From the sequence record LR756502.1: a stretch of DNA of 64,000 nt; one strand, given 5' to 3'. Below are positions 36,481-58,949 of this stretch, in pieces; position 1 is the first letter of the stretch; the number at the start of each line of letters is the position of its first letter. The translations under genes were made by a program, and so were the position numbers. Below the pieces are notes generated by a model. That model was not told the DNA's origin, made no database searches, and was given only the letters and a program-made list of their open reading frames with translations.

Positions 36481-36544
36481 GTAATGACCACTTGGTTTGG
36501 AGGGACATTTATTTTTTAATATATATCCTAAATTTAATCTTTAA

Positions 36545-39097: not shown

Positions 39098-39192
39098 AAA
39101 GTGTTAATTTTTGTAATTTCTTTATTTATTAAAATGTTTAGGCTTCATTTTAAATGTTTTCATGTTCGTTGTTGATACTTGGTCATGTGATG

Positions 39193-39243
39193 TCTGTAAA
39201 AAATCCACCTATATAAAAATATCATTCCACTCTACAATATATA
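39193..39243 (+). promoter_or_regulatory. Late promoter region of prohead protease
   Basis: TCTGTAAAAAATCCACC, AAAAATATCATT and AATATATA elements. Confidence 0.55.
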
Positions 39244-39271
39244 CTATACCTTAAAAAATAAGAAATTTTAA

Positions 39272-41371: not shown

Positions 41372-41422
41372 TCTGTATAAAAAATCCACCCTTGAAAAAT
41401 ATAGGTTTAGGATGAATATATA
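41372..41422 (+). promoter_or_regulatory. Late promoter region of major capsid gene
   Basis: TCTGTATAAAAAATCCACC, then AATATATA 24 nt later. Confidence 0.55.
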
Positions 41423-41451: not shown

Positions 41452-43167
41452 ATGTCACACATTAGAATAGACAAACAAAAAGCAGTTAAGAAGTGGGGAC
41501 CTGTTCTTGAGAACATGGGAGTTACTGGCGACAGAATTGATTGGATGGCAGAATATGCTGAATTTCACCAAATCAATGAGAACGCATATGTAAACGCTTC
41601 TAACGTAGCAGGTATGGGTCAAGTTATTGCAGCTGGTCCATCAATATTACCAGGTGCTACAATTGGTACAAATTGGTCATCAACAGGAATCGCAGGTTCA
41701 GGTGATGTTGGTCAAAACCTTTTACCAGTAGCAATGAAAATCGCAGCTCAAACAATCGGTTTGGATTTAGTAGCTGTTAAGCCTTCTCCAGGACCAAAAA
41801 TTGACTTACTTTATATTGATTTTCAATATGATGATACTCAATTGGGTGCTAATGATGAGAGACCACAGGTTTTCAAATTAAACATGACAGAATTGTCAAC
41901 AGTTCAAATCGCTCTTAGAGCTTTTATGTCTGCTAACGGTATCGTTGAGTCTCAAGGTGGGATGAATGATAGAATCTGGGCTAACATAAACGGATCTTCA
42001 ACAATCTCTACTTTTACTACAACTGATCAAACAGCAAATAGTAAAGTTGGTACAGTTGAATTCTTAGGTTTCTCTCGTATCGATGGTTACCCAATGTTCA
42101 GAGCTTACAGACAGTTTAACACAGCTCACACAGCAGTTACAACTGGTTCTACTCTTTGGTCATTTGACGCAACTAGAAACACATTTAACCCAACACAATC
42201 TATGATTACTCAAGTAACAGCAATTGGTACAGTTTCTGTTAGTGGTGTAACTCTTGAGTTGGTATCAGCTCTTGAAGATCATATCCCGGGATTCTCTGCA
42301 AATTGGAACTCTAGTTCAACTGGATTTGCTGGTAACTATCCAATGGACAGATTACAAGATGACAGCACATATGCTGGTGTTATCGGACCAAAAATTTCTT
42401 CTAAATCTATTGCAGTTGGTACTATTGAAGTAACTTCAGCTCTTAGAAGATCAGAAATTGAAGATATCAAAGCTAACACAGGTATGGACATCGTTCAAAA
42501 GATGGAGTCAATCCTTGTTAATGAGTTATCTCAAACAATTTCTAAACAAATTGTAGCTAAGATTTTCGAAATGGGTGATCTAAACAGAACAACAGCTCCT
42601 TTATTTACTGGAACTGCTTTAGCTGGTGACCCAACTGGAAAAACTATCTTCGACTTAAACACTGTATATGCAGCAGTTGCAACAGGACCAGGAGGAGAAA
42701 CTACACACGCGATTCAACGTAAGTTGATCACTAAGATAGCTCACGCTTCTAACTACATTGCGACTGAAGGTCGTGTTGGTCCAGCTCAATACTTGATCAC
42801 AAATGGAGGTCTTGCAGCAGCTTTACAAGATATCGCTGGTTACACAGTTAACCCTATGAAATCTAAATTAAACTCACAAGGTCAATTATACCCTGTAGGT
42901 ACAATTGGAGATATCTCTATCTATGTTGATCCTTATATGAAGTATAATGACAACAGAATTGTTGTAGGAAGAAAGAACAACGCTGACCAACCTGGTATTA
43001 TTTTCGTACCTTATTTGATGGCTCAGTCTATCTCTGTAATCTCTGAAGCTACATTCGCACCACGTATGTTGTTAAGATCAAGATATGCAGTTGCTGAAGT
43101 TGGTTGGTTCCCACAAAAACAATTTATGACTATTAAAGTTGTAGATGCTAATGGTTACTTAAACTAA
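41452..43167 (+). CDS. gp23: Major capsid protein
   Basis: KKWGPVLE, HQINE cleavage-like site, DLVAVKPSPGP, IYVDPY, PGIIFVPY, FAPRMLLRSRYAV. Confidence 0.95.
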   Translation: MSHIRIDKQKAVKKWGPVLENMGVTGDRIDWMAEYAEFHQINENAYVNASNVAGMGQVIAAGPSILPGATIGTNWSSTGIAGSGDVGQNLLPVAMKIAAQTIGLDLVAVKPSPGPKIDLLYIDFQYDDTQLGANDERPQVFKLNMTELSTVQIALRAFMSANGIVESQGGMNDRIWANINGSSTISTFTTTDQTANSKVGTVEFLGFSRIDGYPMFRAYRQFNTAHTAVTTGSTLWSFDATRNTFNPTQSMITQVTAIGTVSVSGVTLELVSALEDHIPGFSANWNSSSTGFAGNYPMDRLQDDSTYAGVIGPKISSKSIAVGTIEVTSALRRSEIEDIKANTGMDIVQKMESILVNELSQTISKQIVAKIFEMGDLNRTTAPLFTGTALAGDPTGKTIFDLNTVYAAVATGPGGETTHAIQRKLITKIAHASNYIATEGRVGPAQYLITNGGLAAALQDIAGYTVNPMKSKLNSQGQLYPVGTIGDISIYVDPYMKYNDNRIVVGRKNNADQPGIIFVPYLMAQSISVISEATFAPRMLLRSRYAVAEVGWFPQKQFMTIKVVDANGYLN

Positions 43168-43188: not shown

Positions 43189-43218
43189 GAAAAAAGTCCC
43201 TTAATTGGGACTTTTTTC
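43189..43218 (+). terminator. Intrinsic terminator
   Basis: GAAAAAAGTCCC-TTAATT-GGGACTTTTTTC. Confidence 0.85.
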
Positions 43219-43252
43219 ATTTTAAATAGTTTGTGAATTAATATATACACAT

Positions 43253-43942: not shown

Positions 43943-43974
43943 AATTAATATATAGAATATAAAATAAGTATAAT

Positions 43975-46435: not shown

Positions 46436-46717
46436 ATGGAAATCATCGTAAATTCTAGAAAAAAAAGAGAACCTATATCATTAATATTTGATTCAGAGGT
46501 TTATTTACCAAATGAGTTGCTTCGGTCGTTTGATGAGTTAATAGTTCTTAAAAAGATTACACAAGAGGTTTTAGAGTATCTTGGTTTAAATACTGAGAAA
46601 ATTAGTGGATTGAATCCAGGATTTAAAATAACAAAAGTGCTCGTTGATGATGATGAATATGTTAGAATAAAAACAATTGTTAAAAGAGATAATATAATAG
46701 AAAATATACTAAGATGA
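46436..46717 (+). CDS. Hypothetical protein with C-terminal RDNIIENIL motif
   Basis: Ends KRDNIIENILR. Confidence 0.55.
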   Translation: MEIIVNSRKKREPISLIFDSEVYLPNELLRSFDELIVLKKITQEVLEYLGLNTEKISGLNPGFKITKVLVDDDEYVRIKTIVKRDNIIENILR

Positions 46718-47175: not shown

Positions 47176-47410
47176 GTTTTTAATTTTCGTATTTAAACTC
47201 GATGTTGGACCCAATAGCGAGATTATGGAATCATATGCTAATGAGGAACAGTTAATTAAATTAGGATTAGATCCATCAAAAGATATGGATATAAAAATTG
47301 ACCACAAAGGATATAATGTGGCTTCTATTAACCTATCTGGTAAATTCAAAGATAAATATCCACATCATAAAAGAGACCTTTCTCTCCGTAAATTATTTGA
47401 TGAATTGTAG
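47147..47410 (+). CDS. Hypothetical protein with C-terminal RDLSLRKLF motif
   Basis: 87-aa ORF. Confidence 0.55.
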   Translation: MMKSEEKEYKFLIFVFKLDVGPNSEIMESYANEEQLIKLGLDPSKDMDIKIDHKGYNVASINLSGKFKDKYPHHKRDLSLRKLFDEL

Positions 47411-47413
47411 TCC

Positions 47414-47441
47414 AAACTTTTTGAGTAGTAATTAGTATAAT
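47414..47441 (+). promoter_or_regulatory. AAAC-N18-TATAAT promoter (dam)
   Basis: Exact spacing. Confidence 0.6.
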
Positions 47442-47459
47442 TAAAAACTAATATAATAC

Positions 47460-48410
47460 ATGTCAATAATATCATACTTTGGTGGTAAGTCCAGCAATAT
47501 TTTCATCGAATTTATAAATTCGAAAATACCAAAATCAGGTATTAAAACATATGTAGAGCCATTTAGTGGGTCTATGGGTACCTATATGGATGATCCATCT
47601 TTAAATTTTGATACCGTTATTTATAATGATAAAAATAGACACCAAGTAAACCTAGTTAAGTGTTGCTCTGATCCTGAAAAATTTGTTATTTACTTGGAGA
47701 AACTTAAAGATACTTTGTTAAAAACGAATGAAACGGATCCACTTAAAAAGTGGGACTTCTATAAATCTATTTATCATAAATATACTAAAAATGACTTTCT
47801 TGATGATATGAATTTTGAAATCGGTGATTTCAAAAAAGCTGCTATTTATGCTTTTTTAATAACATCTAGCTTTTCTTCTGTGTATCCAAGAGGTGGGGGA
47901 TTTTCTGGATATAACAAGGCAAAAGATAGATTGAAACTAGAGGTACTCATAGGTAAATTAAAGAAAAATAAATATACCAATAAAATAAAGTCAATAACTA
48001 ATTTTTACAATGTTGATTTTGAAGAACTCATTTTAAAATATGATTCAGATGAGACTTATTTATATTTAGATCCTCCTTATGCTAGATTTAATGAAGAAAG
48101 TGGTGAGGATGATGACTCAAAAAGACTATTCTGGTATGGGTCTGATAAGGATGGTGTGTTTGGTCCTCAATCACATAGAAGATTGTTGGAGTTATTAAAG
48201 AATACCAAATGTAGATGGTCACTCTCTTATTACTATTTTCCTCTTTTAGAGGAATTATTACCAAGAGATAAATATTTCTGGACACAGAAGGAGGTATTCA
48301 GAGGATCTGCCCAAGGTGGTAATAATCATGATCCAAATAAAGATCACGCAAAAGGTGTAGAAATTCTAATTATGAATTACGATCCATCTACTGGTAAAAA
48401 AACAAATTAA
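47460..48410 (+). CDS. dam: DNA adenine methyltransferase (D12 class, alpha group)
   Basis: YFGGKS, YVEPFSG, VIYND, LYLDPPY; target sequence not determinable from sequence. Confidence 0.88.
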   Translation: MSIISYFGGKSSNIFIEFINSKIPKSGIKTYVEPFSGSMGTYMDDPSLNFDTVIYNDKNRHQVNLVKCCSDPEKFVIYLEKLKDTLLKTNETDPLKKWDFYKSIYHKYTKNDFLDDMNFEIGDFKKAAIYAFLITSSFSSVYPRGGGFSGYNKAKDRLKLEVLIGKLKKNKYTNKIKSITNFYNVDFEELILKYDSDETYLYLDPPYARFNEESGEDDDSKRLFWYGSDKDGVFGPQSHRRLLELLKNTKCRWSLSYYYFPLLEELLPRDKYFWTQKEVFRGSAQGGNNHDPNKDHAKGVEILIMNYDPSTGKKTN

Positions 48411-48416
48411 TATTAC

Positions 48417-49202
48417 ATGAAATATGATGATATAGTTGATGGTATCAATTTTAATAGAATTAAACTATTTGAGAGTCATGAATTAGCGATCAGTAATAGT
48501 AATCTAAAAAACCCAACATCTTTTGGATTAAGTGTTCCTTTGGTGGATCCACAGTCACTTGTAAATGATATTGGTATTAATGCAGAAGATAATATATTTG
48601 GTATAATAAGACGAGAAGTTTCACAATCAGTAAATAGTATAATTTTCTCTAAACTATTTGCAACTAGAAAGTTTGAGTACTTGGATTTATCTAAATCTGG
48701 TGGGATATCTGGATCTACATATAAGGATCAAAGAAGTTTATATAATCTTATAGTTAGTTCCAATGAAGGATATAGTAATATTATATCTAATGGATATGTT
48801 GCTACATCTCTACAGGATTTACCGGAGTATATACTTACGGGTAGAAATATTCAACGGGATAATTATAATTTCAATGATTATGGTCGTTTGTCTATTCCCA
48901 AAGATATGAGTTTTAATGGACCTGATAGTATAAATATATGGGTTGATCCATATATGACGTATAATGATACTAGATTAGTTATGTTTAGTAATGTTGAATT
49001 TAATTTTACAAATTTGTGTTCCGCTGTTGTTAATAATGCAACATTTACCCCATCAATTAAAATTCAATATGATTTGTCGGTTGATGTTGGTGATTCAAAG
49101 GTAATATTTGTCATTGATAATGAGTCATCTGATGTTTTCCGAAAGTATAAATCACTTCAGCGTGATATAAAAATAGATAATGTTCTTGATGAAGAAGACT
49201 AG
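48417..49202 (+). CDS. Truncated major-capsid paralog
   Basis: IIRREVSQSVNSIIFSKLF, ISNGYVATSLQD and IWVDPYMTYNDTRLV match gp23 ILVNELSQTISKQIVAKIF, ITNGGLAAALQD and IYVDPYMKYNDNRIV. Confidence 0.8.
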   Translation: MKYDDIVDGINFNRIKLFESHELAISNSNLKNPTSFGLSVPLVDPQSLVNDIGINAEDNIFGIIRREVSQSVNSIIFSKLFATRKFEYLDLSKSGGISGSTYKDQRSLYNLIVSSNEGYSNIISNGYVATSLQDLPEYILTGRNIQRDNYNFNDYGRLSIPKDMSFNGPDSINIWVDPYMTYNDTRLVMFSNVEFNFTNLCSAVVNNATFTPSIKIQYDLSVDVGDSKVIFVIDNESSDVFRKYKSLQRDIKIDNVLDEED

Positions 49203-49458
49203 AACATCATCTATTTATGTGAATCCTGGTCCATCTAAACATGAATTAGCAATGGATGTTGATGGTATTACTAGAACCGATAGATTGGTTATTATAGACA
49301 CTGTTGATGGTAAAGAATGGGAGTTATTAATAAAAGATGGTAAAATATCAATAGAGCCATTTGAGCTATCCGAAAAAAGAGATTTTAAAATTAAAAAGGT
49401 GTTAAAGTCATCGGTCAGCATCGGTGAATGGTTGTTATCTAAAATTAAAAATAGATAA
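49180..49458 (+). CDS. Hypothetical protein with RDFKIKKVL motif
   Basis: 92-aa ORF. Confidence 0.5.
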   Translation: MFLMKKTRTSSIYVNPGPSKHELAMDVDGITRTDRLVIIDTVDGKEWELLIKDGKISIEPFELSEKRDFKIKKVLKSSVSIGEWLLSKIKNR

Positions 49459-49460
49459 AT

Positions 49461-49811
49461 TTATCTACTAGCAATATCTAGAATCGCCTTAGCAAGAATA
49501 GATAAATCTCCATTCCCTTTTGACATAGCTTCAACTCTTTCCCATCCATCTTGATTTAGTTCATCCTCAACATTATATATTGGATCGTGATGTTCTAATT
49601 TACTCTCTAAACTATCTATCTTATCTTGAAGCATTGCTGGAGTTAAGTCATCTATTTTTCGAGTAACTTTATTAAATACCATCTTGGAATTCCCTATTAT
49701 CTGTTGCTTCTCAACATCATTCTTGGAAAATCCTCTTCTAATCTTTTTTAGTTCTTCTTTCTCAACATCATTGTTGAAGTCATTGAAGCTTACTATCTTT
49801 TTCTTAGCCAT
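49461..49811 (-). CDS. Hypothetical late protein with capsid-targeting-like N-terminus
   Basis: KIVSFNDF. Confidence 0.5.
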   Translation of the reverse strand: MAKKKIVSFNDFNNDVEKEELKKIRRGFSKNDVEKQQIIGNSKMVFNKVTRKIDDLTPAMLQDKIDSLESKLEHHDPIYNVEDELNQDGWERVEAMSKGNGDLSILAKAILDIASR

Positions 49812-49842
49812 TTAGTATTTTACTTTTTATTATATATTAAAT

Positions 49843-50532
49843 CTAGGATTTAATTTTTTCATCTAATATTCTTGCAATATTACTTCCAATGAAGAAGTGT
49901 ATATTCTTTATTGTGTCTGACTCCACTGTCTCTATTGTATCCATGAACTTAAATTGGAATTTATATATGTCTGTATCATCATCCTCACTATCTATTTTAT
50001 TGATGGATAAGTTCATTTTGTAATTATCATTAATATTTATTTCAAAATCAAATGTGGTTTTGTCACAAGGAGTTGACTTGAACTTTGGTTCATATTTAAC
50101 ATCAAATATTGAATAATCAGTTATTTTAGCTCTTCTCATGTAGTAATTTAGAAACATTGCTGGTGCTTCAATAAAATCTGATAGAATTTGAAGATCTTCA
50201 CCAAAGTTTTTTGACTCAATTATATCTTCTATTTTCTTTTTCATATCAACTATATTACTAAAGTCTATTCTATGATATACGCAATTTATATCATATAAAT
50301 ATATTAATGAGTTTTCTATAATATTTCTTTTATCCAAATCTGTTTTGTAGATAAACTTTGTGTGTATTATTGATGTGTCCTCAATTGATAGTCCATGTAT
50401 ACATATAACCAGCTTATAGAATTCCTTATCATCCGATATTTCATATACCGTCTCGACTGATGTTACTACCCCTTCTTCCTCTTCAAAGATTTCCTTAAAT
50501 GCTTGTTCTATTTCTGATATTTTAATGTTCAT
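49843..50532 (-). CDS. Hypothetical acidic protein
   Basis: 229-aa ORF overlapping the NTase stop. Confidence 0.6.
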   Translation of the reverse strand: MNIKISEIEQAFKEIFEEEEGVVTSVETVYEISDDKEFYKLVICIHGLSIEDTSIIHTKFIYKTDLDKRNIIENSLIYLYDINCVYHRIDFSNIVDMKKKIEDIIESKNFGEDLQILSDFIEAPAMFLNYYMRRAKITDYSIFDVKYEPKFKSTPCDKTTFDFEININDNYKMNLSINKIDSEDDDTDIYKFQFKFMDTIETVESDTIKNIHFFIGSNIARILDEKIKS

Positions 50533-51620
50533 AACCCAAATTCTTCTTTTATATCCTTTACTAACTCTTTAAATGAGTTAAAAGTTTCAGTTCTATTATT
50601 TTTAAAATCTCCGAATACTGTGTTTCCATAGTTTTGTCTTTCAACTCTTATCGGACTTTCTTTATAGAATACTCTTAAATGATCTGAAAATCCTTCAGAA
50701 TATCCATGTGATGAGTAATCAATATCCATATAATCTTTTGATTCATCAAAGTCATATGTTAGACTACAAGACCAACTTTCATCACTTGTTTTAGATATTT
50801 CTTTATCTATATTATCAAGCTCATATAATAGACCCAATATGTCACTATCTGATGATTCAAATTGCTTATCATAGGCATATTTTTTCATATCCATTATCTT
50901 ACTTATATATCCATTTCGTCTTAATAACTTGAACATGATATTTCCTATTGAATATTCACCACTTTCACTCTCTAATCCACTTTTTCTTAGATCTTTTATT
51001 TTCTTCCATACCTTATCAATCTTAACCTTGAAGGATGAGTAGTTATCCTCATCAACCTGTTCTTCAATTTCATCAACCTTATACATTATTGACTTTGCCT
51101 TGGATGATATTAGCTTCTCATCCGGTTCAAAGTCTGCTTTTATTGGCCTTTTTATCCACTTATTATTAAGTATTGAAAATACACCACCCATTCTTCCTGA
51201 TTTTATAGCAACTTTGAGATCATCTTCATCTTGAATAGCAATTTCTACCTCATATCCCTTTATAGTTATATCATGCATTGAATTCCATAACTTCTTGGCG
51301 TAGTCACAAAGTTGTTCAACCAACTCTAGATTTTCATCAACATCTTTGTAATTTATTATTATATGTAAGTCAAAATCGGAATATTTTTCCGACCAATTGT
51401 AATTACACAATGACCCACACAACGCAATATCAATAACATCTACCTCTATATCTGTCGACTCGAAAAAATCTTGTGCAATTTGAAGAAGTTGTTCTCTTGT
51501 TTCTTTATCTAAATCAAATCCATCCCATAACTTAGGATTTAAATCATCCTTTAGGTAAAATGACTTAATTGGTTCTAAATCAACCTCTTTGAATTCATAG
51601 AATTTACTTAACATAATCAT
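50529..51620 (-). CDS. Pol-beta-family nucleotidyltransferase
   Basis: GSLCNYNWS..SDFDLH, VEI (third acidic residue); N-terminus LSKFYEFKE. Confidence 0.82.
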   Translation of the reverse strand: MIMLSKFYEFKEVDLEPIKSFYLKDDLNPKLWDGFDLDKETREQLLQIAQDFFESTDIEVDVIDIALCGSLCNYNWSEKYSDFDLHIIINYKDVDENLELVEQLCDYAKKLWNSMHDITIKGYEVEIAIQDEDDLKVAIKSGRMGGVFSILNNKWIKRPIKADFEPDEKLISSKAKSIMYKVDEIEEQVDEDNYSSFKVKIDKVWKKIKDLRKSGLESESGEYSIGNIMFKLLRRNGYISKIMDMKKYAYDKQFESSDSDILGLLYELDNIDKEISKTSDESWSCSLTYDFDESKDYMDIDYSSHGYSEGFSDHLRVFYKESPIRVERQNYGNTVFGDFKNNRTETFNSFKELVKDIKEEFGL

Positions 51621-51685
51621 ATATATTAAATTGACTGAATACTATTTATTATAAACTTTGATATTTTATATATATAAACAATCAA

Positions 51686-53026
51686 ATGGATAAAACATAT
51701 AATAGTGAAATGGGTAAATTAGTTACATTAAATGGAGTAGATGATCAAAAGCTACTTGATGAAATTATAGACAATGAAATAGTTGTCATTGAAGATGTTC
51801 AGGGTAGTAAAATTTGGGTTAATTGGGATGGTGAAAAATTTTCAATAAAGCCAAAGTCAATAAGCAATGATCCTATTAATTTAATAGACCTTGCTATGCA
51901 AAACTACTATAACCCAGCTATAAACTACCTTGACTCATTGGATAGTAGGATTAAATCACTTTTGAATAAAAAGTGGTCATTTTGCTTTGAATATTTCCCT
52001 GATAATCAACCAGCTAATATTGAATATCAGAAAATGCCAAAAAATAATCTGGTTCTTACTTCAATATGTAAAAATGGTAAGTATGATTATACACTAGAAG
52101 AACTTGACGAATATGCAAGACTATTTGATGTTGATATTATACCAGTTGTTTTTAAAGGTAAGCTCTCTCAAAGAATGGTTGAGGCCATTAAATATTTTAT
52201 AAACACTGGTGAAGATGACTTGGAGTATGTATTTGGTGAAAAGTCATTTGCATTTTTCTTCTATAAGATATTAAACCCTTCTTCTGATAGTTCTTTTTTG
52301 ATGGATGGTGATAACTTTCAGGATAACTTAGAAAAGCTTATTATAAAAGTGCAGGGTAAAGATATTTCATTTGAAATACTAAACCCTCTTTATAAGAGAG
52401 TTAGTGATACCAACTCAACCGAATTTGTTGAAATATATACACTTATACTTATAAACTTTCTTAACTTCTGTCAATCCATTGATATGGATGATATAAAGCT
52501 AAAGGGTGAATCAAAGGACGAGTCATATATTTATCTAATCTGTAAACTATATAACATATATGTCTCCGAGGTAAAGGATGACTTGATAAATTTTGATTTT
52601 ATCATACCTGAATTTTTTGACAAGGATAAGTTCAAAATTAACAAGGAGTTAATATCAAATAAGCTAACAAAGGAATATATTGATGAGAGTGATAAGCTTG
52701 AGTATATATTTAAAGTTATACTTGGATCATTTAATAGAAAAAGAAAAAAGCCACTTGGTGTTTTTAGTGATAGTACGGTTATTACATTTAATGCATTCGT
52801 TGATAGTATTAATGTGTATATCGAGAAATATCTAAATAGAATTCATGAGGTTGAATTAACAAGAGCTGGTCTTCTAGACTTTGGTGACTTTTTTGAGATT
52901 AAGTATGATCAAGATGCTGAAGGTGATGTTTATCCTGATGTATATGGCGAGTTTGAAAAAGAACCAACTGAGTCTAAGAAAAAGGGCAAAGGTGGTAAGT
53001 ATCCATCAAAAGCTCCATCCAAGTAG
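51686..53026 (+). CDS. RNA-ligase-like fold with degenerate motif I
   Basis: VIEDVQGSKIW in place of EKxDGS; FCFEYF; IIPVVFKG. Confidence 0.45.
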   Translation: MDKTYNSEMGKLVTLNGVDDQKLLDEIIDNEIVVIEDVQGSKIWVNWDGEKFSIKPKSISNDPINLIDLAMQNYYNPAINYLDSLDSRIKSLLNKKWSFCFEYFPDNQPANIEYQKMPKNNLVLTSICKNGKYDYTLEELDEYARLFDVDIIPVVFKGKLSQRMVEAIKYFINTGEDDLEYVFGEKSFAFFFYKILNPSSDSSFLMDGDNFQDNLEKLIIKVQGKDISFEILNPLYKRVSDTNSTEFVEIYTLILINFLNFCQSIDMDDIKLKGESKDESYIYLICKLYNIYVSEVKDDLINFDFIIPEFFDKDKFKINKELISNKLTKEYIDESDKLEYIFKVILGSFNRKRKKPLGVFSDSTVITFNAFVDSINVYIEKYLNRIHEVELTRAGLLDFGDFFEIKYDQDAEGDVYPDVYGEFEKEPTESKKKGKGGKYPSKAPSK

Positions 53027-53187
53027 TGAAAATCATCGATTTGAATTTAACATCTGTTGTTGTTCAATGCAAAACAGTTAAAATTCGCTCTAAATGGACT
53101 AGAGTGATGGCTCATGATATTTATGTGATGGGTAGGAAAAATTCCTTTAGGAAAGATAAAATTCGTAAAATTTTAGATTCTATATAA
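53026..53187 (+). CDS. 53-aa ORF not in ORF track, with RKDKIRKIL motif
   Basis: GTG overlaps the preceding TAG; ends SFRKDKIRKILDSI. Confidence 0.55.
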   Translation: MKIIDLNLTSVVVQCKTVKIRSKWTRVMAHDIYVMGRKNSFRKDKIRKILDSI

Positions 53188-53216
53188 ACAATCTCCACTT
53201 TTTGCTTATAAAAATT

Positions 53217-54437
53217 ATGAATGTAGTAGTAAATTGGGATGATATTTCAAGATCATCCATTCGATCAAAGTTAGAAGACAAGAAGAATAGTTTACAATTT
53301 CTTCCACATTGTCTTGAGGAATCCTCAAAATTAAATACCTTTACTTATAAGGGACAAAAACTAAAGATGTCCTATGTTGTCGATATAGTACATAACCTAA
53401 TACTTAAGTATTATTTCAAGAGAGATAATAAATTTAACCTATCATCCGTTATTTTAAAGGAAAAATATGGATATTTATATAACTACTATATTAACTACCT
53501 TGTTGATCAAAAGATAATACTAATGCTTTTTAATTATAAGGCTGGTACAAGGTCAAGAGTATATGCTCTAAATGAGTCAATATTGAGAGGGAATATTAAG
53601 AGATATAGAAATTCTGATAAGACTATTCTTAAAAAATATAAGAATAAAGTGTCTCAGGTCGAAGAGGGTGGCATAGAGAACTCTCTTATAGATAATGATA
53701 TTAAATCTAAATTGGTCAATGATCTATTTAATATTAAGATAGAATTTGATAGATCTGTATTCTATCTGGATTCACTTAAGAACGAGGATAGTGACATATA
53801 TAATAGAAACAAGTATAGTGTTGAGTGTATAAACGATAAGCATATATTCTATCATTTTGATAACTATGGTCGTATGCATACAAACTTCACAATATTAAAA
53901 TCCTTTATAAGGAAGAACTGTCTTCTTATAGATGATATGAGGACTTCCGAAATAGACATACCTAATAGCCAACCACTATTTCTATCAAAACTAATTGAGA
54001 ATAGTAAGTGGGTTGATGTTGATGAACTAAAGCTATTTAAATATCTAACAATAGAGGGAATATACTATAAGTATGTAATGACCGAATTGGGTATATCTGA
54101 TAAGTCCGAGGTTAAAGAACTAACATATAAAGTTCTATTTGGAAGAAATGGTAAAAATAGTAAGTCTGATATACTTTTCTGTAAACTATTTCCAACAATA
54201 CATAATTTTATAAAGCTATATAAGAAGGAGATGGGAGATTATAAAATATTAGCATATGAATTACAAAAGGCTGAGTCGAATTTGATATTCAATAAGATAA
54301 TAAGGCAAATAATGACACTATATCCGGATATAAAGATAGTAACTGTACATGATAGTATAATTGTTGCTGATAAATGGAAGGATCAAGTGTCTGCTGTTTT
54401 TTATTCTAAATTATATGAGGAGTTCGGTGTAATATGA
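53217..54437 (+). CDS. Family-A-polymerase-like protein lacking exonuclease domains
   Basis: YGRMHT, EIDIPNSQP (motif A), KELTYKVLFG (motif B), LQKAES, VTVHDS (motif C); helical N-domain. Confidence 0.55.
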   Translation: MNVVVNWDDISRSSIRSKLEDKKNSLQFLPHCLEESSKLNTFTYKGQKLKMSYVVDIVHNLILKYYFKRDNKFNLSSVILKEKYGYLYNYYINYLVDQKIILMLFNYKAGTRSRVYALNESILRGNIKRYRNSDKTILKKYKNKVSQVEEGGIENSLIDNDIKSKLVNDLFNIKIEFDRSVFYLDSLKNEDSDIYNRNKYSVECINDKHIFYHFDNYGRMHTNFTILKSFIRKNCLLIDDMRTSEIDIPNSQPLFLSKLIENSKWVDVDELKLFKYLTIEGIYYKYVMTELGISDKSEVKELTYKVLFGRNGKNSKSDILFCKLFPTIHNFIKLYKKEMGDYKILAYELQKAESNLIFNKIIRQIMTLYPDIKIVTVHDSIIVADKWKDQVSAVFYSKLYEEFGVI

Positions 54438-54589
54438 AAACATTTTATCTTAAAAATAAAATTGATGAGAGTACTAAAATTAGTGTGGGTGCCAATACCC
54501 TCGATCAAGCTATAAAGCTTTTTTCCAAAATTAAAAAATTAGGGAAAGATGATCTTCTTAAAAAATTTATTGTAACTGATCGATTATGA
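54434..54589 (+). CDS. 51-aa basic ORF not in ORF track
   Basis: ATGA overlap with upstream stop; MKTFYLKNK...TDRL. Confidence 0.5.
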   Translation: MKTFYLKNKIDESTKISVGANTLDQAIKLFSKIKKLGKDDLLKKFIVTDRL

Positions 54590-54607
54590 TAATTTAATAT
54601 ATACTTA

Positions 54608-55138
54608 ATGATAGGATTGGACCAATCAACATCTTCTTATATTATAATCTCGACAAATAATGGTATTGAAAGTACTCTTTATGGTCGAGACTATTCTATT
54701 ATCCCTATAAAGGAGTTCTATAAGGGATCCTATGTTGACTATATCATATCTTATGGTCGTGTCGATAATGGTAATCTTAGAAAAGATGTTTTATTTTTAT
54801 TAAATGAGTTTAACCAGGATTCGGCTATTATAAAATATACTGGAGAAAATATAATTAGAAAGATATACCGAGATGGATCTGAAGTACAGGTTGATATAGA
54901 TTTATATAGTACCGACTTTGACAAAGAGTCATACATTTACAATGGGTATTCATTCTCTTTTACCGAAACAAAGAAGTATTTCTTCCCTACAAAAAAGGAA
55001 GACATTAAGATAGGGATGATAGTTGAATTTTTTAATAATAATAAATGGGTTGAGAAGAAAGTCTATAACCCAGATTTGGAATATGATAATCTGTATAAAT
55101 TACTTATTAAGTATAATAAGGTAAGAATTCCTATTTAG
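54608..55138 (+). CDS. Hypothetical protein
   Basis: 176-aa ORF with late promoter. Confidence 0.55.
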   Translation: MIGLDQSTSSYIIISTNNGIESTLYGRDYSIIPIKEFYKGSYVDYIISYGRVDNGNLRKDVLFLLNEFNQDSAIIKYTGENIIRKIYRDGSEVQVDIDLYSTDFDKESYIYNGYSFSFTETKKYFFPTKKEDIKIGMIVEFFNNNKWVEKKVYNPDLEYDNLYKLLIKYNKVRIPI

Positions 55139-55887
55139 TTTATTTTAAACCAAACAAAATTTTTATAGAATGTCATATTAGTTTCACATATGTTATATCT
55201 ACCACCATCAACATAATCAATCATCATTAGTCCGCCCCCACTGTTATCGTTTTCTATTCGTCCTATAATTACCTTATCTGGATCAATTCTACTTGAAATG
55301 ATAATTTTAGATCCGTTAAAACTACCAATTATACTTGGGTTATTACTTGCCGTCTCTGGTGAAGTATAAGTATTTAGTAGTGTTTTAAATATTTTTTGTG
55401 TTTCAACTCCAGCAATTATTATATTCGCTGGTCCTTTCCTGGATAACTGTGCGATCATGTTTGATAGACCAGTCAATCTAGCTACAATCTTCCGTAGTGT
55501 ATCGTTATATGTTATTGTAGAAAGATTACAGGTTGATAGATAAGAGTGTTGTCCTTTTGTGTTTGATTCAATGTAGTCAATTACATCATTCCAAGTATCG
55601 ATGTTTGATTTGAAGTTGGTGTTGGCTAGAACATTCATTGATTTTACCTTAACTGAGAATTCTGGATAGATCATCATTTCATCTGATCCAAGGTGAAATC
55701 GATTATCATATTCTTCCACTTTGTCTTCAAGAATAACATCAAGAGCAAGATTTCTATTTTTTTGAATTATAGATCTCTTATACTCATCACTACTACTATC
55801 TTCTGATTCAATGTAGTTTATAACAGATTTTGGTTGATCTACCTTTATATAATTACATATTATTTTAATATCCTCTTTACTTATCAT
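55135..55887 (-). CDS. Second divergent major-capsid paralog fragment
   Basis: LRKIVARLTGLSNMIAQLSRKGPANIII and IGSFNG..KVIIGR match gp23 RKLITKIAHASNYIATEGRVGPAQYLI and VGTIG..RIVVGR. Confidence 0.65.
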   Translation of the reverse strand: MISKEDIKIICNYIKVDQPKSVINYIESEDSSSDEYKRSIIQKNRNLALDVILEDKVEEYDNRFHLGSDEMMIYPEFSVKVKSMNVLANTNFKSNIDTWNDVIDYIESNTKGQHSYLSTCNLSTITYNDTLRKIVARLTGLSNMIAQLSRKGPANIIIAGVETQKIFKTLLNTYTSPETASNNPSIIGSFNGSKIIISSRIDPDKVIIGRIENDNSGGGLMMIDYVDGGRYNICETNMTFYKNFVWFKIN

Positions 55888-56632
55888 ATTTGTTTACCAT
55901 TCCAATTTTTTGTTGAGAAATGTTAATCTGTCTAGCTAATTCTTCTTTAGAAACATTGGCCGCACCGCTTAGTATCTGAAGATTCCTTTGATACCACTTC
56001 ATGTCTGGGTTGTCCTTACTATGATATAAATGATAACACTTATATTTTAACTCTGTCCATGTTAGAAAATGCTTGACCTTCATTGTCTGAAAGTCATCCT
56101 CTCCTCCCCATCCAATGAAGTCTTCGTTCCATCCTCCTATTTTAGTAATGGCTTCCTTTTTGAACATTGCAATTCCACCAGAGATGTTAATTTTTTGATT
56201 ATCATTTTCTCCTCTACCTGGTCTATTTATCTGCATTATTTGTCCAAATTCTAATCCACTTTCTTGTGGTGTTAGGTCAACTACTGAATAATATGGGCTA
56301 ACCATATCAAAATTTTGAACATTCTTCAATCCTTCTATAAACTCATCTGGGTTCATTAGTAAGTCAGAATCACCGAATACTAATATTGGTGAAGTTGAAT
56401 ACCTTAGAGCTACATTAAATGCCCATGACCTATTGTATGGCATATTCGACTTAATGAATATATGTTTCGCTTTTAGATTTAGATTTTTAATTTTAGAGTG
56501 TGTGTCTTGTTCAACTAATAGTACTTCGGCGCCACTAAATCCGTTAATCCACTCAAGGACTCTTTTTAGATTTGATAGTCTGTCTAGTCTATGTCTGTAT
56601 CCGATGACATAAGTAAAGGAATATGGATTCAT
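55877..56632 (-). CDS. Glycosyltransferase (GT2/GT7-like)
   Basis: LVEQD, YNRSWAFN, FGDSD, IGGWNEDFIGWGGEDD, YHLYH. Confidence 0.85.
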   Translation of the reverse strand: MNPYSFTYVIGYRHRLDRLSNLKRVLEWINGFSGAEVLLVEQDTHSKIKNLNLKAKHIFIKSNMPYNRSWAFNVALRYSTSPILVFGDSDLLMNPDEFIEGLKNVQNFDMVSPYYSVVDLTPQESGLEFGQIMQINRPGRGENDNQKINISGGIAMFKKEAITKIGGWNEDFIGWGGEDDFQTMKVKHFLTWTELKYKCYHLYHSKDNPDMKWYQRNLQILSGAANVSKEELARQINISQQKIGMVNKYDK

Positions 56633-56650
56633 TAAAGATATTATTTTTTA

Positions 56651-56678
56651 TTTATACTTTTTTAAACAGATAATGTTT
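56651..56678 (-). promoter_or_regulatory. AAAC-N18-TATAAA promoter (glycosyltransferase operon)
   Basis: Exact spacing. Confidence 0.55.
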
Positions 56679-56765
56679 AATTGTATTTGGGTAATCAGTA
56701 AAATTTATTATATTTGTAGGACGAAGCTATAAAATATATATAAAAGTAAAGTAATTTTTTCAAAA

Positions 56766-57170
56766 ATGAATAAAATTGGAAGAGTGGAGAAAATAAGTTT
56801 TCCAGATCTTAATATACTTTCACTAGACGCAAAGGTTGATACTGGAGCATATGGTACAGCTTTGCATGTTGATGGTATACGAGCAAGAGCTGGTAAATTA
56901 TCATTTTGGATAAATGATCCATCTAACAGATTGTACTTTGATAGATATAGAGTAATTAATGTTAGAAACTCTTTTGGTAAAAAGCAAAAAAGATATTCAA
57001 TTATGACAAGAGTTGTAGTTGGTGATTCAACATATAAGATATTTATATCACTTACAAACAGAAAGGATATGAAGTATCCTGTGTTGATTGGTCGTAGATT
57101 TCTATATAAGTTCAATTATATAGTTGATGTTAGAAAAAAACATTTAAATGATAAATCTAAAAAGGTGTAA
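56766..57170 (+). CDS. RimK-associated retropepsin-like protease
   Basis: IGRVEKI, AKVDTGAYGTALH, MKYPVLIGRRFL. Confidence 0.82.
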   Translation: MNKIGRVEKISFPDLNILSLDAKVDTGAYGTALHVDGIRARAGKLSFWINDPSNRLYFDRYRVINVRNSFGKKQKRYSIMTRVVVGDSTYKIFISLTNRKDMKYPVLIGRRFLYKFNYIVDVRKKHLNDKSKKV

Positions 57171-57696
57171 CTATATTACTGGAGATCCTCAATCAATATC
57201 GTTTGGTGTTGCTCGGATACTCGACTATCTTGAACTAGATGGTAGAAATATAGTATTACTAACTCTAGGTAAGAGAAATATAAGACAAAGTCTAACCCCA
57301 CTTTCATATTTTGTAAATAATAAGATTGAATATAATAATATCGGTGATTTTGGAAATATATTTTCTGATACATCAGTACTATTTAGGGTTGATCTTATTG
57401 TTGTTGATTTTTGGCATTTGAAGACTTCTGAGATTATAGACTATAAGGATATATTAGATAGTTCTAATATTGATTATATTATAGTGGCCAAAGAATACCA
57501 CTATAAGGACTCTGATGATGTTAATGATTATCATATAAAGAAGGAATCATCAGCCACAAGCATTGGGTTTCATCAACCTGATTCCAACTATATTATAACA
57601 AATAAAGTAGATGGTTGGTCAAGTGACCTTGATAGTATTGTAAAATCACATGTAAGAGATAAGAAGATTGATGGTATAATTGGTACTAAAGAATAG
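57148..57696 (+). CDS. Hypothetical protein with C-terminal RDKKIDGII motif
   Basis: Possible degenerate RecA-like fold (LIVVDFW). Confidence 0.5.
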   Translation: MINLKRCNYITGDPQSISFGVARILDYLELDGRNIVLLTLGKRNIRQSLTPLSYFVNNKIEYNNIGDFGNIFSDTSVLFRVDLIVVDFWHLKTSEIIDYKDILDSSNIDYIIVAKEYHYKDSDDVNDYHIKKESSATSIGFHQPDSNYIITNKVDGWSSDLDSIVKSHVRDKKIDGIIGTKE

Positions 57697-57764: not shown

Positions 57765-58949
57765 ATGCGAATTAGACGAAAATTTCTTCAATTAACAAGT
57801 TGGACTTATCCTTATGGAACTGAGTATACACTTGAGAGTTACCTACCAAAAGGATTTCAAAGAGATGAAAATGAGAACTATTATATTGTAGTTGGTAATA
57901 ATCCAAGTACAATGTTTACTTGTCATTTAGATACAGCTTGTTCATATCAGGAAAAAGTAACACATGTACCCAGTGGTAATTTTATTAGAACTAATGGTAA
58001 GACAATTTTAGGATCTGATGATAAGGCTGGTATGACAGTTATGTTATATATGATTGAGAAAAAGGTTCCTGGTATATACTACTTCTTTACTGGTGAGGAA
58101 GTTGGATGTATTGGATCTGGTGATTTGGCAGATCAGTGGTTTGAGTTAAAAATGTTTAATGATATAACTAAAATTGTTTCTTTTGATAGAAGGGGTACTG
58201 GTTCTGTAATTACTCACCAATTATATGGTAGATGTTGTTCAAATGAGTTCGCTGAAGAACTATCAAAGAGATTAAACGATACTGATGAGGGCATTAATAT
58301 GTCTCCGGATAATACTGGTATAATGACAGATTCTGCTAAGTTTGTTGATATGGTTCCGGAGTGTACTAACATTTCAGTTGGATATTATAAAGAACATACT
58401 GTTGATGAGTGTCAAGATATTGAATTTTTGCAGAGGTTGTGTAAGGCTGTTGTTAAAATTGACTGGGAAACACTTCCGGTTAAGAGAGATCCGACCGAAG
58501 AAGAAGAGGAAAGTTATATAGATACTTATGCAAATTGGAGTAATGGAAAATATAAGTACTCAATAGATGAAGATGGATATGAGTTCTTGGAGGAAAACTA
58601 TACATATGTTCAGTATTCTACACCAACTGGTAAGGATGTAAAGAAAATGCTTATTTCAAAGGATAGAGTTTCTGAGGAAAAGAAATATATATACAACTGG
58701 GTATTCTCAACCGGGTTATATAGTGATATGACTGGTATGGATTGGAATGGTCATTCATTGTATATTGCAAATGCGAAAGGAAATCTTGAATTTGTTGGTA
58801 ATAGAGTTGAGCTTATGGATTATGTCCCTGAGTTAAAGACTGTTCCAACAAGATGTCTTTCTGATAAACCTAGGAAGCACGTTAAGGATATAGACACTGA
58901 AGTTACTGACATGAGTGATGATAGGTTTATGGAAGAGTATATGTATTAA
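57765..58949 (+). CDS. Second M20/M28-family metallopeptidase
   Basis: CHLDTA, LGSDDKAG, GEEVGCIGS, SFDRRG, TNISVGYYKEHT. Confidence 0.82.
   Translation: MRIRRKFLQLTSWTYPYGTEYTLESYLPKGFQRDENENYYIVVGNNPSTMFTCHLDTACSYQEKVTHVPSGNFIRTNGKTILGSDDKAGMTVMLYMIEKKVPGIYYFFTGEEVGCIGSGDLADQWFELKMFNDITKIVSFDRRGTGSVITHQLYGRCCSNEFAEELSKRLNDTDEGINMSPDNTGIMTDSAKFVDMVPECTNISVGYYKEHTVDECQDIEFLQRLCKAVVKIDWETLPVKRDPTEEEEESYIDTYANWSNGKYKYSIDEDGYEFLEENYTYVQYSTPTGKDVKKMLISKDRVSEEKKYIYNWVFSTGLYSDMTGMDWNGHSLYIANAKGNLEFVGNRVELMDYVPELKTVPTRCLSDKPRKHVKDIDTEVTDMSDDRFMEEYMY

What the first reader, a model, noticed from the sequence alone, without database searches (positions are those of the whole stretch)
48417..55887. 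Two miniature capsid-protein paralogs among non-structural genes
Seen: 261-aa and 250-aa ORFs align by eye to the C-terminal half of this phage's gp23 but lack its N-arm and propeptide. They sit in the dam and glycosyltransferase operons behind AAAC-type promoters, and both carry the RDxKI motif. Inference: not ordinary vertex proteins. They may be assembly chaperones, decoys for host capsid-sensing immunity, or poisons of competing phage assembly.
Basis: partly seen in the sequence, partly recalled or inferred. Interest (0 to 1): 0.72.

Follow-up and report, generated by a model that had tools for sequence, protein, structure and literature searches.

The report
Two fast-evolving mini capsid-protein paralogues
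A 642-kb phage of Bacteroidetes carries two small, rapidly evolving copies of its own capsid-shell protein that are switched on with DNA-replication genes rather than with the head genes, and one of them ends in a short peptide tag shared by dozens of unrelated phage proteins, so they probably do something other than build the shell.

Summary
The window is part of LR756502.1, a 642-kb uncultured huge phage. ORFs 48417-49202(+) (p261) and 55135-55887(-) (p250) are real, conserved genes. Both are distant paralogues of the phage's gp23-type major capsid protein at 41452-43167: profile-profile E is 4.6e-17 and 2e-13, and the AlphaFold models hit T4 gp23/gp24, HK97 and encapsulins. They are not only a C-terminal half. 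The models align over nearly their whole length as compact HK97 cores without propeptide or insertion domain.

Three results argue against ordinary vertex proteins:
- Both are translationally coupled to dam and GT2, behind a TAAACTT-N17-TATAAT promoter class. Genome-wide, that class drives polymerase, helicase, SSB, RNR and topoisomerase genes. Portal, protease, capsid, terminase and baseplate genes use a different TAATATATA box.
- Their dN is about 8-fold (p250) and about 2-3-fold (p261) that of well-conserved neighbours, with omega 0.35-0.55 against 0.03-0.25.
- p261 ends in an invariant RDIKIDNIL tag. The tag closes 44 unrelated ORFs (0.4 expected), none of which has the late box.

Function is untested. 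Most likely they are off-lattice capsomer mimics or binders made before head assembly. A gp24-like minor capsid role remains the main rival.

The parts
48417..49202 (+). p261: compact HK97-fold paralogue of the gp23-type capsid protein (261 aa)
   Evidence: ORF. A family of 29 proteins of about 245 aa was found and 27 were aligned. hhalign against the MCP gives E 4.6e-17. The AF2 model has pLDDT 78.5. Foldseek hits T4 head proteins and encapsulins.
49161..49187 (+). C-terminal peptide tag of p261 (R249-D-I-K-I-D-N-V-L257), within predicted helix 239-259
   Evidence: S246, Q248, R249, D250, K252 and I253 are invariant in 27 homologues. The same tag type ends 44 ORFs genome-wide against 0.39 expected. 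It is conserved in orthologues from 4 phages.
55135..55887 (-). p250: compact HK97-fold paralogue of the gp23-type capsid protein (250 aa)
   Evidence: ORF. The family has 156 representative clusters, mostly about 230-270 aa. hhalign against the MCP gives E 2e-13. The AF2 model has pLDDT 92. Foldseek hits T4 gp23/gp24 and HK97 and viral MCPs.
55729..55755 (-). Degenerate internal tag-like motif of p250 (R45-N-L-A-L-D-V-I-L53), in predicted helix 34-54
   Evidence: R45 is the only invariant column of the 68-sequence family alignment, whose consensus here is NRxLxIDxxL. The best local profile match between the two families pairs this segment with the p261 C-terminus, E 7.5e-4.
47460..48410 (+). 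dam-type N6-adenine methyltransferase, first gene of the p261 operon
   Evidence: Pfam MethyltransfD12 E 4.6e-15 and phrog_56. Its stop lies 6 nt before the p261 start. The dam-p261 order recurs in three other phages, directly in two and with one small gene between in the third.
47414..47441 (+). Replication-class promoter box upstream of dam (AAAC-N18-TATAAT)
   Evidence: Sequence read. The class is 6.6% of gene upstreams against 0.7% background. Genes behind this class are listed.
55877..56632 (-). GT2-family glycosyltransferase, first gene of the p250 operon; its stop overlaps the p250 start by 11 nt
   Evidence: Pfam Glyco_transf_7C and Glycos_transf_2, and phrog_1721. The overlap is conserved in L001, L002 and L022.
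56651..56678 (-). Replication-class promoter box upstream of GT2 (TAAAC-N18-TATAAATA)
   Evidence: Sequence read. The TAAAC and TATAA(A/T)TA elements are conserved in 4 phages while the spacer has diverged.
41452..43167 (+). gp23-type major capsid protein (571 aa), the parent of both paralogues
   Evidence: Pfam Gp23 E 3.7e-28. It is 75-89% identical across the listed best 120 of more than 2000 relatives.
41415..41422 (+). Late/structural-class box (AATATATA) upstream of the capsid gene
   Evidence: The same box lies upstream of the portal, protease, terminase and baseplate hub genes. It is conserved upstream of the MCP in relatives.
43189..43218 (.). Bidirectional intrinsic terminator after the capsid gene, separating late head transcripts from the downstream genes
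   Evidence: 12-13 bp stem followed by a T run on both strands.
49180..49458 (+). Small tagged ORF (92 aa) overlapping the 3' end of p261; third gene of the operon
   Evidence: It carries the tag KRDFKIKKVL. The ORF and its tag are conserved in L021, L001 and L002.

Best explanation
p261 and p250 are two anciently diverged, compact HK97-fold paralogues of this huge phage's gp23-type major capsid protein. Each keeps the shell-protein core but has lost the propeptide, N-arm similarity and insertion domain. This part is shown.

They are single-copy genes in conserved syntenic positions in at least four related phages. They are co-transcribed with a dam methylase and a glycosyltransferase from the promoter class that also drives the DNA-replication and nucleotide-metabolism genes. 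They evolve several-fold faster than their neighbours. This part is shown at the sequence level; the timing of expression is inferred from promoter class.

The proposed mechanism is inferred.
- They are not stoichiometric lattice subunits. They are off-lattice capsomer mimics made before the head genes.
- They keep segments of MCP-like sequence: WVDPYMKFNDGR and TTGxIASELQD in p261, and SNxIAxxGRxGPA and PDKIIxxR in p250.
- If these segments are capsomer contacts, which is my inference and not something mapped here, the two proteins could bind capsid-protein subunits or whatever else recognises them.
- The outcome would be a regulatory or host/competitor-conflict role: assembly control, sensor decoy or assembly interference.
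- The RDxKIDxIL helix of p261 links it to a set of about 45-70 non-late proteins that probably dock on one common partner.
For: **Homology and fold:**

**Real, constrained genes:** the families keep their lengths and have conserved columns, and omega is below 1.

**Synteny:**

**Promoter classes**
- Class c2 (AAAC-N16-20-TATAAW) lies upstream of 63 of 957 genes against 0.7% background.
- c2 genes include PolB, DnaB, gp32-like SSB, both RNR subunits, both topoisomerase II subunits, a 5'-3' exonuclease and an Mre11-like protein.
- Class c1 (AATATATA) lies upstream of 197 of 957 genes against 1.2% background.
- c1 genes include the portal, protease, MCP, large terminase, baseplate hub and a head-decoration-like gene.
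- Both box types are conserved in relatives.
- A strong terminator follows the MCP gene.

**Rates**
- Against LR745206, p261 is 34.5% and p250 31.2% identical; these are the two lowest of 26 orthologue pairs, and the MCP is 75.7%.
- Against a close relative, p250 has dN 0.40 while GT2 has 0.05 and o54608 has 0.07. p261 has omega 0.55 while four of its five immediate neighbours show 0.12-0.25 and dam shows 0.38.

**Tag**
- The loose motif occurs in 73 ORFs against 8 expected, with 44 at the C-terminus against 0.39 expected. The strict motif occurs 30 times against 0.07 expected.
- Carriers are unrelated to each other outside the tag.
- 0 of 44 C-terminal carriers have their own late box, p = 6e-5.
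- The tag is conserved in orthologues.
Against: - No experiment or expression data exists. Promoter class is only a proxy for timing, and read-through or unrecognised internal late promoters cannot be excluded.
- No other gp24-like gene was found in the whole genome, so a vertex role is vacant unless the MCP makes its own pentons.
- Short vertex proteins exist in T4-type phages, for example the 297-aa nt-1 protein.
- Conserved, syntenic, single-copy genes close to the head module are more typical of core functions than of accessory conflict genes.
- No precedent is known to me for a capsid-fold decoy or chaperone.
- Elevated omega may reflect relaxed constraint rather than an arms race, and dS is saturated (above 1) for p250.
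Confidence: 0.42

Rival explanations
1. They are minor virion capsid proteins. One or both would form the pentons at the 11 non-portal vertices, or occupy other special lattice sites, as functional analogues of T4 gp24 that have shed the insertion domain.
For: - The head module is T4-type (gp20, gp21, gp23).
- No other gp23/gp24-like full-length gene exists in the 642 kb.
- Both models show a complete HK97 core.
- The 22-24% identity to the MCP equals the roughly 21% between gp23 and gp24 in T4 (PMC10580926).
- A 297-aa 'head vertex protein' of Vibrio phage nt-1 is a structural match.
- In the Rak2-like jumbo phage phAPEC6 the vertex protein could not be identified in silico (PMC7247149).
- The genes lie 5-13 kb downstream of the MCP in conserved synteny.
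Against: - They sit behind the replication-class promoter, with no late box.
- p250's dN is about 8-fold that of its neighbours, and both proteins are 31-35% identical where the lattice partner MCP is 76%.
- Two different paralogues are present.
- p261 shares a tag with non-late proteins.
- Neither family was detected within 20 kb either side of the MCP in the 735-kb phage, the 462-kb phage or Lak-A1, nor in the PAU head region.
- In the jumbo phage phiKp24 a 597-aa MCP builds both hexamers and pentamers (PMC9700779). Its relatedness to this MCP was not tested here.
- gp24 is absent from cyanomyoviruses (PMC2984593).
Confidence: 0.3
2. They self-assemble into small encapsulin-like shells or a capsomer-like hub, separate from the phage head. 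The RDxKIDxIL peptide would be the addressing signal that brings early and middle proteins to it.
For: - Both are of encapsulin size, with short N-terminal helices.
- Many encapsulins are among the best p261 matches.
- A terminal peptide tag on dozens of unrelated proteins resembles cargo-loading or encapsulation peptides. The resemblance to those systems is from general knowledge.
- One tag carrier is a riboflavin kinase, an enzyme.
Against: - The tag sits on p261 itself.
- There is no encapsulin Pfam hit.
- The tag consensus is unlike known encapsulin loading peptides.
- Sequence homology is to the phage's own MCP, not to encapsulins.
- There is no evidence of assembly.
- p250 has only a degenerate, buried version of the tag.
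Confidence: 0.07
3. They are decaying duplicates of the capsid gene with no function of their own.
For: They diverge fast. The genome also holds MCP fragments and a frameshift-split third copy.
Against: - The ORFs are intact, with conserved length, in 29 homologues (p261) and 156 representative clusters (p250).
- Several motifs are invariant.
- Omega is below 1.
- Operon position and gene overlaps are conserved in four phages.
- The fold predictions are confident.
Confidence: 0.03

Closest known systems
T4 gp24 head vertex protein (paralogue of gp23)
   Same: It is an HK97-fold derivative of the gp23-type capsid protein by duplication. Identity to the parent is about 21-24%. It occurs in a phage with a gp20/gp21/gp23 head module.
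   Different: gp24 keeps the insertion domain and a cleaved N-terminal peptide, lies next to gene 23 and is a late gene. Here the proteins are about 250 aa with no insertion domain or propeptide similarity. They lie in dam and GT2 operons behind a replication-class promoter, evolve much faster than the capsid protein, and there are two of them.
Short head vertex proteins of KVP40/nt-1-type T4-like phages (297 aa entry R9TJ44 in BFVD)
   Same: It is a small HK97-fold protein in a T4-type phage and a structural match to p250 (E 4.9e-6).
   Different: Only a structural resemblance was seen. Sequence relation, gene position and expression class were not compared here.
Encapsulin shell proteins with C-terminal cargo-loading peptides
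   Same: They have a compact HK97 fold of about 260 aa with an N-terminal helix instead of an N-arm. A short terminal peptide is shared by unrelated proteins of the same genome.
   Different: There is no sequence membership, because the homology is to the phage's own gp23-type protein. The tag is on the capsid-like protein itself and has a different consensus. No assembly has been shown.
Capsid-fold proteins of phage satellites that redirect helper assembly (PICI capsid homologues such as the E. coli CFT073 prophage capsid protein 3bqw; P4 Sid works differently)
   Same: They are HK97-fold proteins that act on another capsid protein's assembly rather than being the resident shell. 3bqw is among the p261 matches.
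   Different: Those are encoded by satellites and act against a helper phage. Here the genes are core genes of the phage itself, and no satellite features were seen.
T4 capsid-targeting sequences and BMC encapsulation peptides (short terminal helices that address proteins to a protein shell)
   Same: RDxKIDxIL is a short, probably helical, terminal peptide appended to many unrelated proteins.
   Different: Its carriers lack late promoters, which argues against packaging into heads. The receptor is unknown and the consensus is different.

Membership tests
HK97-fold capsid protein superfamily, gp23 lineage (Pfam PF07068) | Sequence match to the Gp23 family model at the curated threshold | tested here: not met
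   p250 scores 17.9 bits against a cut-off of 24.4 (E 0.0023). p261 has no Pfam hit.
HK97-fold capsid protein superfamily, gp23 lineage (Pfam PF07068) | Significant profile-level homology to a bona fide gp23-family protein | tested here: met
   hhalign against the phage's own MCP family gives E 4.6e-17 for p261 and 2e-13 for p250. HMMs of both families hit the MCP at 1.5e-18 and 5.7e-18 in the genome-wide ORF set.
HK97-fold capsid protein superfamily, gp23 lineage (Pfam PF07068) | HK97 fold (spine helix, P-domain sheet, A-domain) | tested here: met
   The AF2 models have pLDDT 78.5 and 92. Foldseek gives 79 and 76 PDB hits at E<=1e-3; the listed top 50 of each are HK97-fold shell entries, and the alignments span nearly the whole query. 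These are predicted, not solved, structures.
HK97-fold capsid protein superfamily, gp23 lineage (Pfam PF07068) | N-terminal propeptide/N-arm and insertion domain of gp23-type proteins | tested here: not met
   There is no similarity to MCP residues 1-340. The length of 250-261 aa leaves no room for the insertion domain. Other small ORFs in the genome do carry the MCP N-terminal segment.
T4 gp24-type vertex (penton) protein | Paralogue of the major capsid protein in a T4-type head module | tested here: met
T4 gp24-type vertex (penton) protein | Late gene within or beside the head gene cluster, co-regulated with gene 23 | tested here: not met
   They are 5 and 12 kb from the MCP, in the dam and GT2 operons behind c2 boxes. 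The c1 box of head genes is absent, and a terminator follows the MCP. Timing is inferred from sequence only.
T4 gp24-type vertex (penton) protein | Present in virions as pentamers at 11 vertices | not testable with these tools
   The phage is uncultured. No proteome or map is available.
T4 gp24-type vertex (penton) protein | Evolutionary constraint comparable to the lattice partner | tested here: inconclusive
   Both are much faster than the MCP and their neighbours. No quantitative yardstick for true vertex proteins was computed here.
Encapsulin shell protein | Membership of an encapsulin sequence family | tested here: not met
   No encapsulin or Linocin_M18 hit in Pfam, NCBIfam or PHROGs.
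Encapsulin shell protein | Compact HK97 fold with N-terminal helix, structurally close to encapsulins | tested here: met
   Encapsulins and PfV are among the top p261 matches, with E 8e-6 to 1e-4 and TM 0.40-0.47. Both models have N-terminal helices.
Encapsulin shell protein | Cargo proteins with a terminal loading peptide that binds the shell | tested here: inconclusive
   A terminal tag exists on 44 ORFs. It is also on p261 itself, and binding is untested.
Known anti-phage defence or counter-defence families | Match to a curated defence-system model | tested here: not met
   PADLOC gives no hit for p261, p250 or seven neighbours.

The most novel reading that the evidence does not exclude
The RDxKIDxIL peptide is an addressing signal. 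It would recruit several dozen early and middle phage proteins, including enzymes such as a riboflavin kinase, to a phage-built assembly made of, or organised by, the miniature HK97-fold proteins. That would make it a capsid-derived intracellular compartment or hub that operates before head assembly.
Probability: 0.07. Interest if true: 0.9.

Novelty: new variant of a known kind. Interest (0 to 1): 0.62.

Why it matters
Duplicated capsid proteins are known as vertex proteins. Here capsid-fold paralogues appear to have left the late structural programme. They are expressed with replication genes, they evolve at the pace of conflict genes, and p261 carries a proteome-wide peptide tag.

If they act off the lattice, as regulators of giant-head assembly, as mimics that blunt capsid-sensing immunity, or as a hub for tagged proteins, this would be a new use of the commonest viral fold. 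It would also give a handle on how 600-kb phages organise infection.

The tag is a separate lead: it marks about 5-8% of the ORFs and has no known function. The three-class promoter map is also directly usable for annotating these unannotated huge-phage genomes.

Tried and rejected
- **Sequence search of PDB.** Profiles of both families and of the MCP gave no capsid hit. Homology to solved structures is visible only by fold.
- **p261 against p250 directly.** No significant similarity. They are independent, old derivatives. Only the tag segments pair weakly.
- **Tag as a DNA element such as a promoter or mobile-element end.** Rejected. Codons differ between instances, substitutions follow amino-acid similarity, and the tag is kept in orthologues.
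- **Tag carriers as one paralogous family.** Rejected. 73 of 74 are singletons after masking the tag.
- **Tag as a capsid-packaging signal.** Disfavoured. Carriers lack late boxes. Portal, protease and MCP give no match to a tag HMM.
- **Cultured relatives with virion data.** The Sphingomonas phage PAU head region has no member of either family. tblastn of a short Gp23-like relative hits only the MCPs of Lak, pT24, PAU, PTm1 and MA9V phages.
- **Lak-A1 and the 735-kb and 462-kb huge phages.** No orthologue within 20 kb either side of the MCP. Their whole genomes were not scanned.
- **Sigma-70 consensus scan.** Uninformative in this AT-rich DNA: 105 found against 100 expected.
- **Literature.** No paper found on capsid decoys or on mini capsid paralogues in huge phages.

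Full report
**Identity of the window.** Positions 47400-56700 are 100% identical to LR756502.1 positions 233400-242700. LR756502.1 is an unannotated 642,428-bp 'uncultured phage'. It matches the 642-kb complete genome of the Mahaphage clade, whose largest members are predicted to infect Bacteroidetes (PMC7162821). Window position plus 186,000 gives the record position. The window contains no N.

**The observation**
- The two ORFs exist as described: p261 at 48417-49202(+) and p250 at 55135-55887(-).
- The phage's gp23 is ORF 41452-43167 (571 aa, Pfam Gp23 E 3.7e-28). It is preceded by a gp20-like portal (36545-38260) and a gp21-like prohead protease (39272-41371).
- Within the window, the only significant match of either small protein is this MCP.
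- BLASTP of p261 against the MCP gives E 5e-7 (residues 63-225 against 354-551, 22% identity). It includes the striking INIWVDPYMTYNDTRLV against ISIYVDPYMKYNDNRIV.
- BLASTP of p250 against the MCP gives E 1e-3 (132-226 against 423-522).
- p250 has sub-threshold hits to Pfam Gp23 (E 0.0023) and to phrog_28442, the PHROG that the MCP itself matches at 2.9e-50.

**Families and profile evidence**
- p261 belongs to a family of 29 proteins of about 245 aa, at 31-82% identity.
- p250 belongs to a large family: 156 representative clusters at E<=1e-3 and 80 at <=1e-10, most of them about 230-270 aa.
- Profile-profile comparison with an alignment of 19 MCPs gives 98.8% probability and E 4.6e-17 for p261 (p261 52-221 against MCP 343-546).
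- The same comparison gives 98.0% and E 2e-13 for p250 (128-225 against 415-521).
- The two small families are not detectably similar to each other in their cores. Each keeps a different subset of MCP motifs. They are therefore independent, old derivatives.

**Structure**
- The AlphaFold2 models are good: p261 has pLDDT 78.5 and pTM 0.75; p250 has pLDDT 92.0 and pTM 0.84.
- Foldseek against the PDB returns 79 and 76 matches at E<=1e-3. The listed top 50 of each are HK97-fold shell entries, led by T4 gp23/gp24 (7vrt, 8gmo, 9mkb, 1yue). They also include HK97 itself, phiKZ, phage S6 and, for p261, many encapsulins and the P. furiosus virus-like particle.
- Against predicted viral structures, p250 hits gp23-type MCPs, the 590-aa MCP of Tenacibaculum phage pT24 and a 297-aa 'head vertex protein' of Vibrio phage nt-1.
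- The alignments cover essentially the whole of both queries.
- The correct description is therefore a complete, compact HK97 core without the insertion domain and without sequence similarity to the MCP's first 340 residues. It is not 'a C-terminal half'.

**Genomic context and conservation**
- The p261 start lies 6 nt after the stop of a D12-class adenine methyltransferase.
- The p250 start overlaps the stop of a GT2 glycosyltransferase by 11 nt.
- The same arrangement recurs in three other sources:
  - LR745206.1 (635 kb).
  - A 481-kb JGI contig, where a small DUF1653 gene lies between dam and the p261 orthologue.
  - Two contigs from one further sample.
- In the two long sequences the block is MCP ... 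NADAR - dam - p261 - small ORF ... 176-aa ORF - p250 <- GT2 - RimB-like.
- They are thus core, single-copy, syntenic genes of a subclade.
- Within 20 kb either side of the MCP in Lak-A1, the 735-kb phage and the 462-kb phage, neither family is found. Nor is it found in the head region of the cultured jumbo phage PAU.
- An HMM scan of all ORFs of the 642-kb genome finds no further full-length gp23/gp24-like gene.

**Expression class**
- Two upstream box classes were defined on the whole genome.
  - AATATATA (usually TTAATATATA) occurs within 50 nt of the start of 197 of 957 ORFs, 20.6% against 1.2% background.
  - AAAC-N16-20-TATAA[AT] (consensus TAAACTT..N17..TATAAT) occurs upstream of 63 ORFs, 6.6% against 0.7% background.
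  - Only 11 ORFs have both.
- The first class precedes the portal, prohead protease, MCP, large terminase, baseplate hub and a head-decoration-like gene.
- The second class precedes these genes:
  - family B DNA polymerase, DnaB-like helicase and a DEAD_2/ResIII-type helicase;
  - gp32-like SSB;
  - both ribonucleotide reductase subunits;
  - both topoisomerase II subunits;
  - a 5'-3' exonuclease and an Mre11-like phosphoesterase;
  - PrkA, NAD synthase and a sugar epimerase;
  - two further GT2 genes and glutamine synthetase;
  - dam and the GT2 gene of the finding.
- The second class is therefore a replication/metabolism class, by analogy with T4 middle promoters. The temporal assignment is an inference.
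- The GT2 box is conserved in four phages while the spacer has diverged, and the MCP box is conserved too.
- A strong bidirectional terminator follows the MCP gene.
- A third box, TATATTTG, resembles the Bacteroidetes -7 element. It is also enriched, 6.4% against 1.2%.

**Evolutionary rate**
- Between the 642-kb and 635-kb genomes, p261 (34.5%) and p250 (31.2%) are the two least conserved of 26 detectable orthologue pairs in the block. The MCP is 75.7%, dam 77% and GT2 70% identical.
- The MCP is 75-89% identical across the listed best 120 of more than 2000 relatives.
- Against a much closer phage, p250 has 53.5% identity, dN 0.40 and omega about 0.35. Its overlapping neighbour GT2 has 91.6%, dN 0.05 and omega 0.035.
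- In the same comparison p261 has omega 0.55, four of its five immediate neighbours have 0.12-0.25, and dam has 0.38.
- dS is saturated for p250, so the ratios are rough, but the contrast in dN is not.
- Both genes are under purifying selection (omega below 1, invariant motifs), yet far less constrained than a lattice subunit would be expected to be.

**The RDxKI motif**
- p261 ends in ...YKSLQRDIKIDNVLDEED. In 27 homologues S246, Q248, R249, D250, K252 and I253 are invariant.
- Across the genome the motif [RK][DEN]x[KRIL]Ixx[ILVM][ILV] occurs in 73 of about 959 ORFs against 8.1 expected from residue shuffles. Of these, 44 lie within 6 residues of the C-terminus against 0.39 expected.
- The strict form R[DE]xKI[DN]x[ILVM][IL] occurs 30 times against 0.07 expected.
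- Carriers are mostly 70-220 aa and are unrelated outside the motif: 73 of 74 are singletons. One is a riboflavin kinase.
- Codons differ between instances, and the tag is retained in orthologues of three different proteins in four phages. It is therefore a peptide-level tag.
- None of the 44 C-terminal carriers has its own late box, against 197 of 913 other ORFs (p = 6e-5). At operon level 6.8% are late-class against 38% genome-wide. This argues against a head-packaging signal.
- p250 lacks the literal motif. It has R45-N-L-A-L-D-V-I-L in a confidently predicted helix (34-54). R45 is the only invariant column of its family. This segment is the best local profile match to the p261 C-terminus, E 7.5e-4.

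**Interpretation**
- Shown: two conserved, compact HK97-fold paralogues of the gp23-type MCP, in conserved operons with non-structural genes, behind a conserved promoter box shared with replication genes, evolving fast, one carrying a proteome-wide tag.
- Inferred: they are made before the head genes and act off the lattice.
- I rate 'off-lattice capsomer mimic or binder with a regulatory or conflict role' at about 0.4.
- I rate a gp24-like or other minor virion protein at about 0.3. The vertex role is otherwise vacant in this genome, short vertex proteins exist in other T4-type phages, and the vertex protein of at least one T4-related jumbo phage could not be identified in silico (PMC7247149). 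Against this, another jumbo phage builds its pentons from a large MCP (PMC9700779), and cyanomyoviruses lack gp24 (PMC2984593).
- An encapsulin-like hub to which the tag addresses proteins is the most novel reading, at about 0.07.
- Functionless remnants are effectively excluded.
- No defence-related, NCBIfam or informative PHROG/Pfam annotation exists for either protein.
- I found no paper describing such paralogues or the tag.

**Verdict.** The finding is a new variant of a known kind, a capsid-protein paralogue. It has an unusual regulatory and evolutionary signature and a link to an undescribed peptide tag. It deserves experimental follow-up, and its function remains open.

Noticed in passing
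Whole LR756502.1 genome. In the window: 14736-15011(+), 25318-25782(-), 38292-38714(-), 46436-46717(+), 49180-49458(+), 57148-57696(+), 62004-62372(+), 62753-63298(+): The peptide tag (S)xxR-[DE]-x-K-I-[DN]-x-[IV]-L closes 44 unrelated, mostly small ORFs against 0.4 expected. It occurs in 73 ORFs in all, about 8% of the ORFs. Carriers lack late-class promoter boxes, and the tag is conserved in orthologues from related phages. Its receptor and function are unknown.
   Followed up: partly
Genome-wide. Window examples: 36517-36525, 43239-43247, 43946-43954 (TAATATATA); 47414-47441, 51653-51678, 56678-56651 (AAAC..TATAAW); upstream of 57765 (CCGTATATTTGTATAAATA): Three upstream box classes are present. 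TAATATATA marks head, terminase and baseplate genes. TAAACTT-N17-TATAAT marks replication and nucleotide-metabolism genes. A Bacteroidetes-like TAnnTTTG box is 6.4% against 1.2% background. Together they give a usable temporal map for this unannotated genome.
   Followed up: partly
Record 315773-316270(+), 542908-543423(+), 80294-80539(+) (outside the window; loci L009, L013, L005): Three small ORFs (165, 171 and 81 aa) share the N-terminal propeptide/N-arm segment of the MCP, within residues 8-129, at E 1e-14 to 2e-9. The first also has an internal tag and a replication-class promoter. They may be prohead-core or MCP-propeptide mimics.
   Followed up: partly
Record 501380-502047(-) and 277261-277446(+) (loci L013, L008): A third mini MCP-like gene appears split by a frameshift. 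A 59-aa ORF carries the MCP 421-451-like helix. A 167-aa ORF carries an ISIYP..EYN segment and a C-terminal RDNKINSIL tag. Separately, a 61-aa ORF holds MCP 513-546 followed by a tag-like end.
   Followed up: partly
Window 43975-45351(+) and 57765-58949(+): Two paralogous peptidase-like genes (phrog_4191; 47-49% identical to each other's orthologues) flank the region. One lies directly downstream of the MCP/NFACT-R genes. A retropepsin-like RimB/Zn_protease gene sits at 56766-57170.
   Followed up: no
Window 43253-43942(+): An NFACT-R (RNA-binding, ribosome-quality-control type) domain protein is encoded immediately after the capsid gene. It is conserved at that position in two related phages.
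   Followed up: no
Window 32053-33150(-) and record 38954-39598(-): The phage encodes a glutamine synthetase-like gene behind a replication-class promoter, and a riboflavin kinase that carries the C-terminal tag.
   Followed up: no
Window 47460-48410 against L021 1923-2837: The dam gene is only 51% identical between two phages whose neighbouring genes are 85-95% identical. Synonymous divergence drops to 0.17-0.30 in four of the five genes around it (o46436, NADAR, p261, o49180). This suggests a recent recombination or gene replacement at this spot.
   Followed up: no
Locus L018 (Lak-A1, MK250016.1) 18924-20876: With table 11 the Lak-A1 capsid gene reads as two adjacent ORFs of 369 and 281 aa. 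This is consistent with the stop-codon reassignment reported for Lak phages.
   Followed up: no
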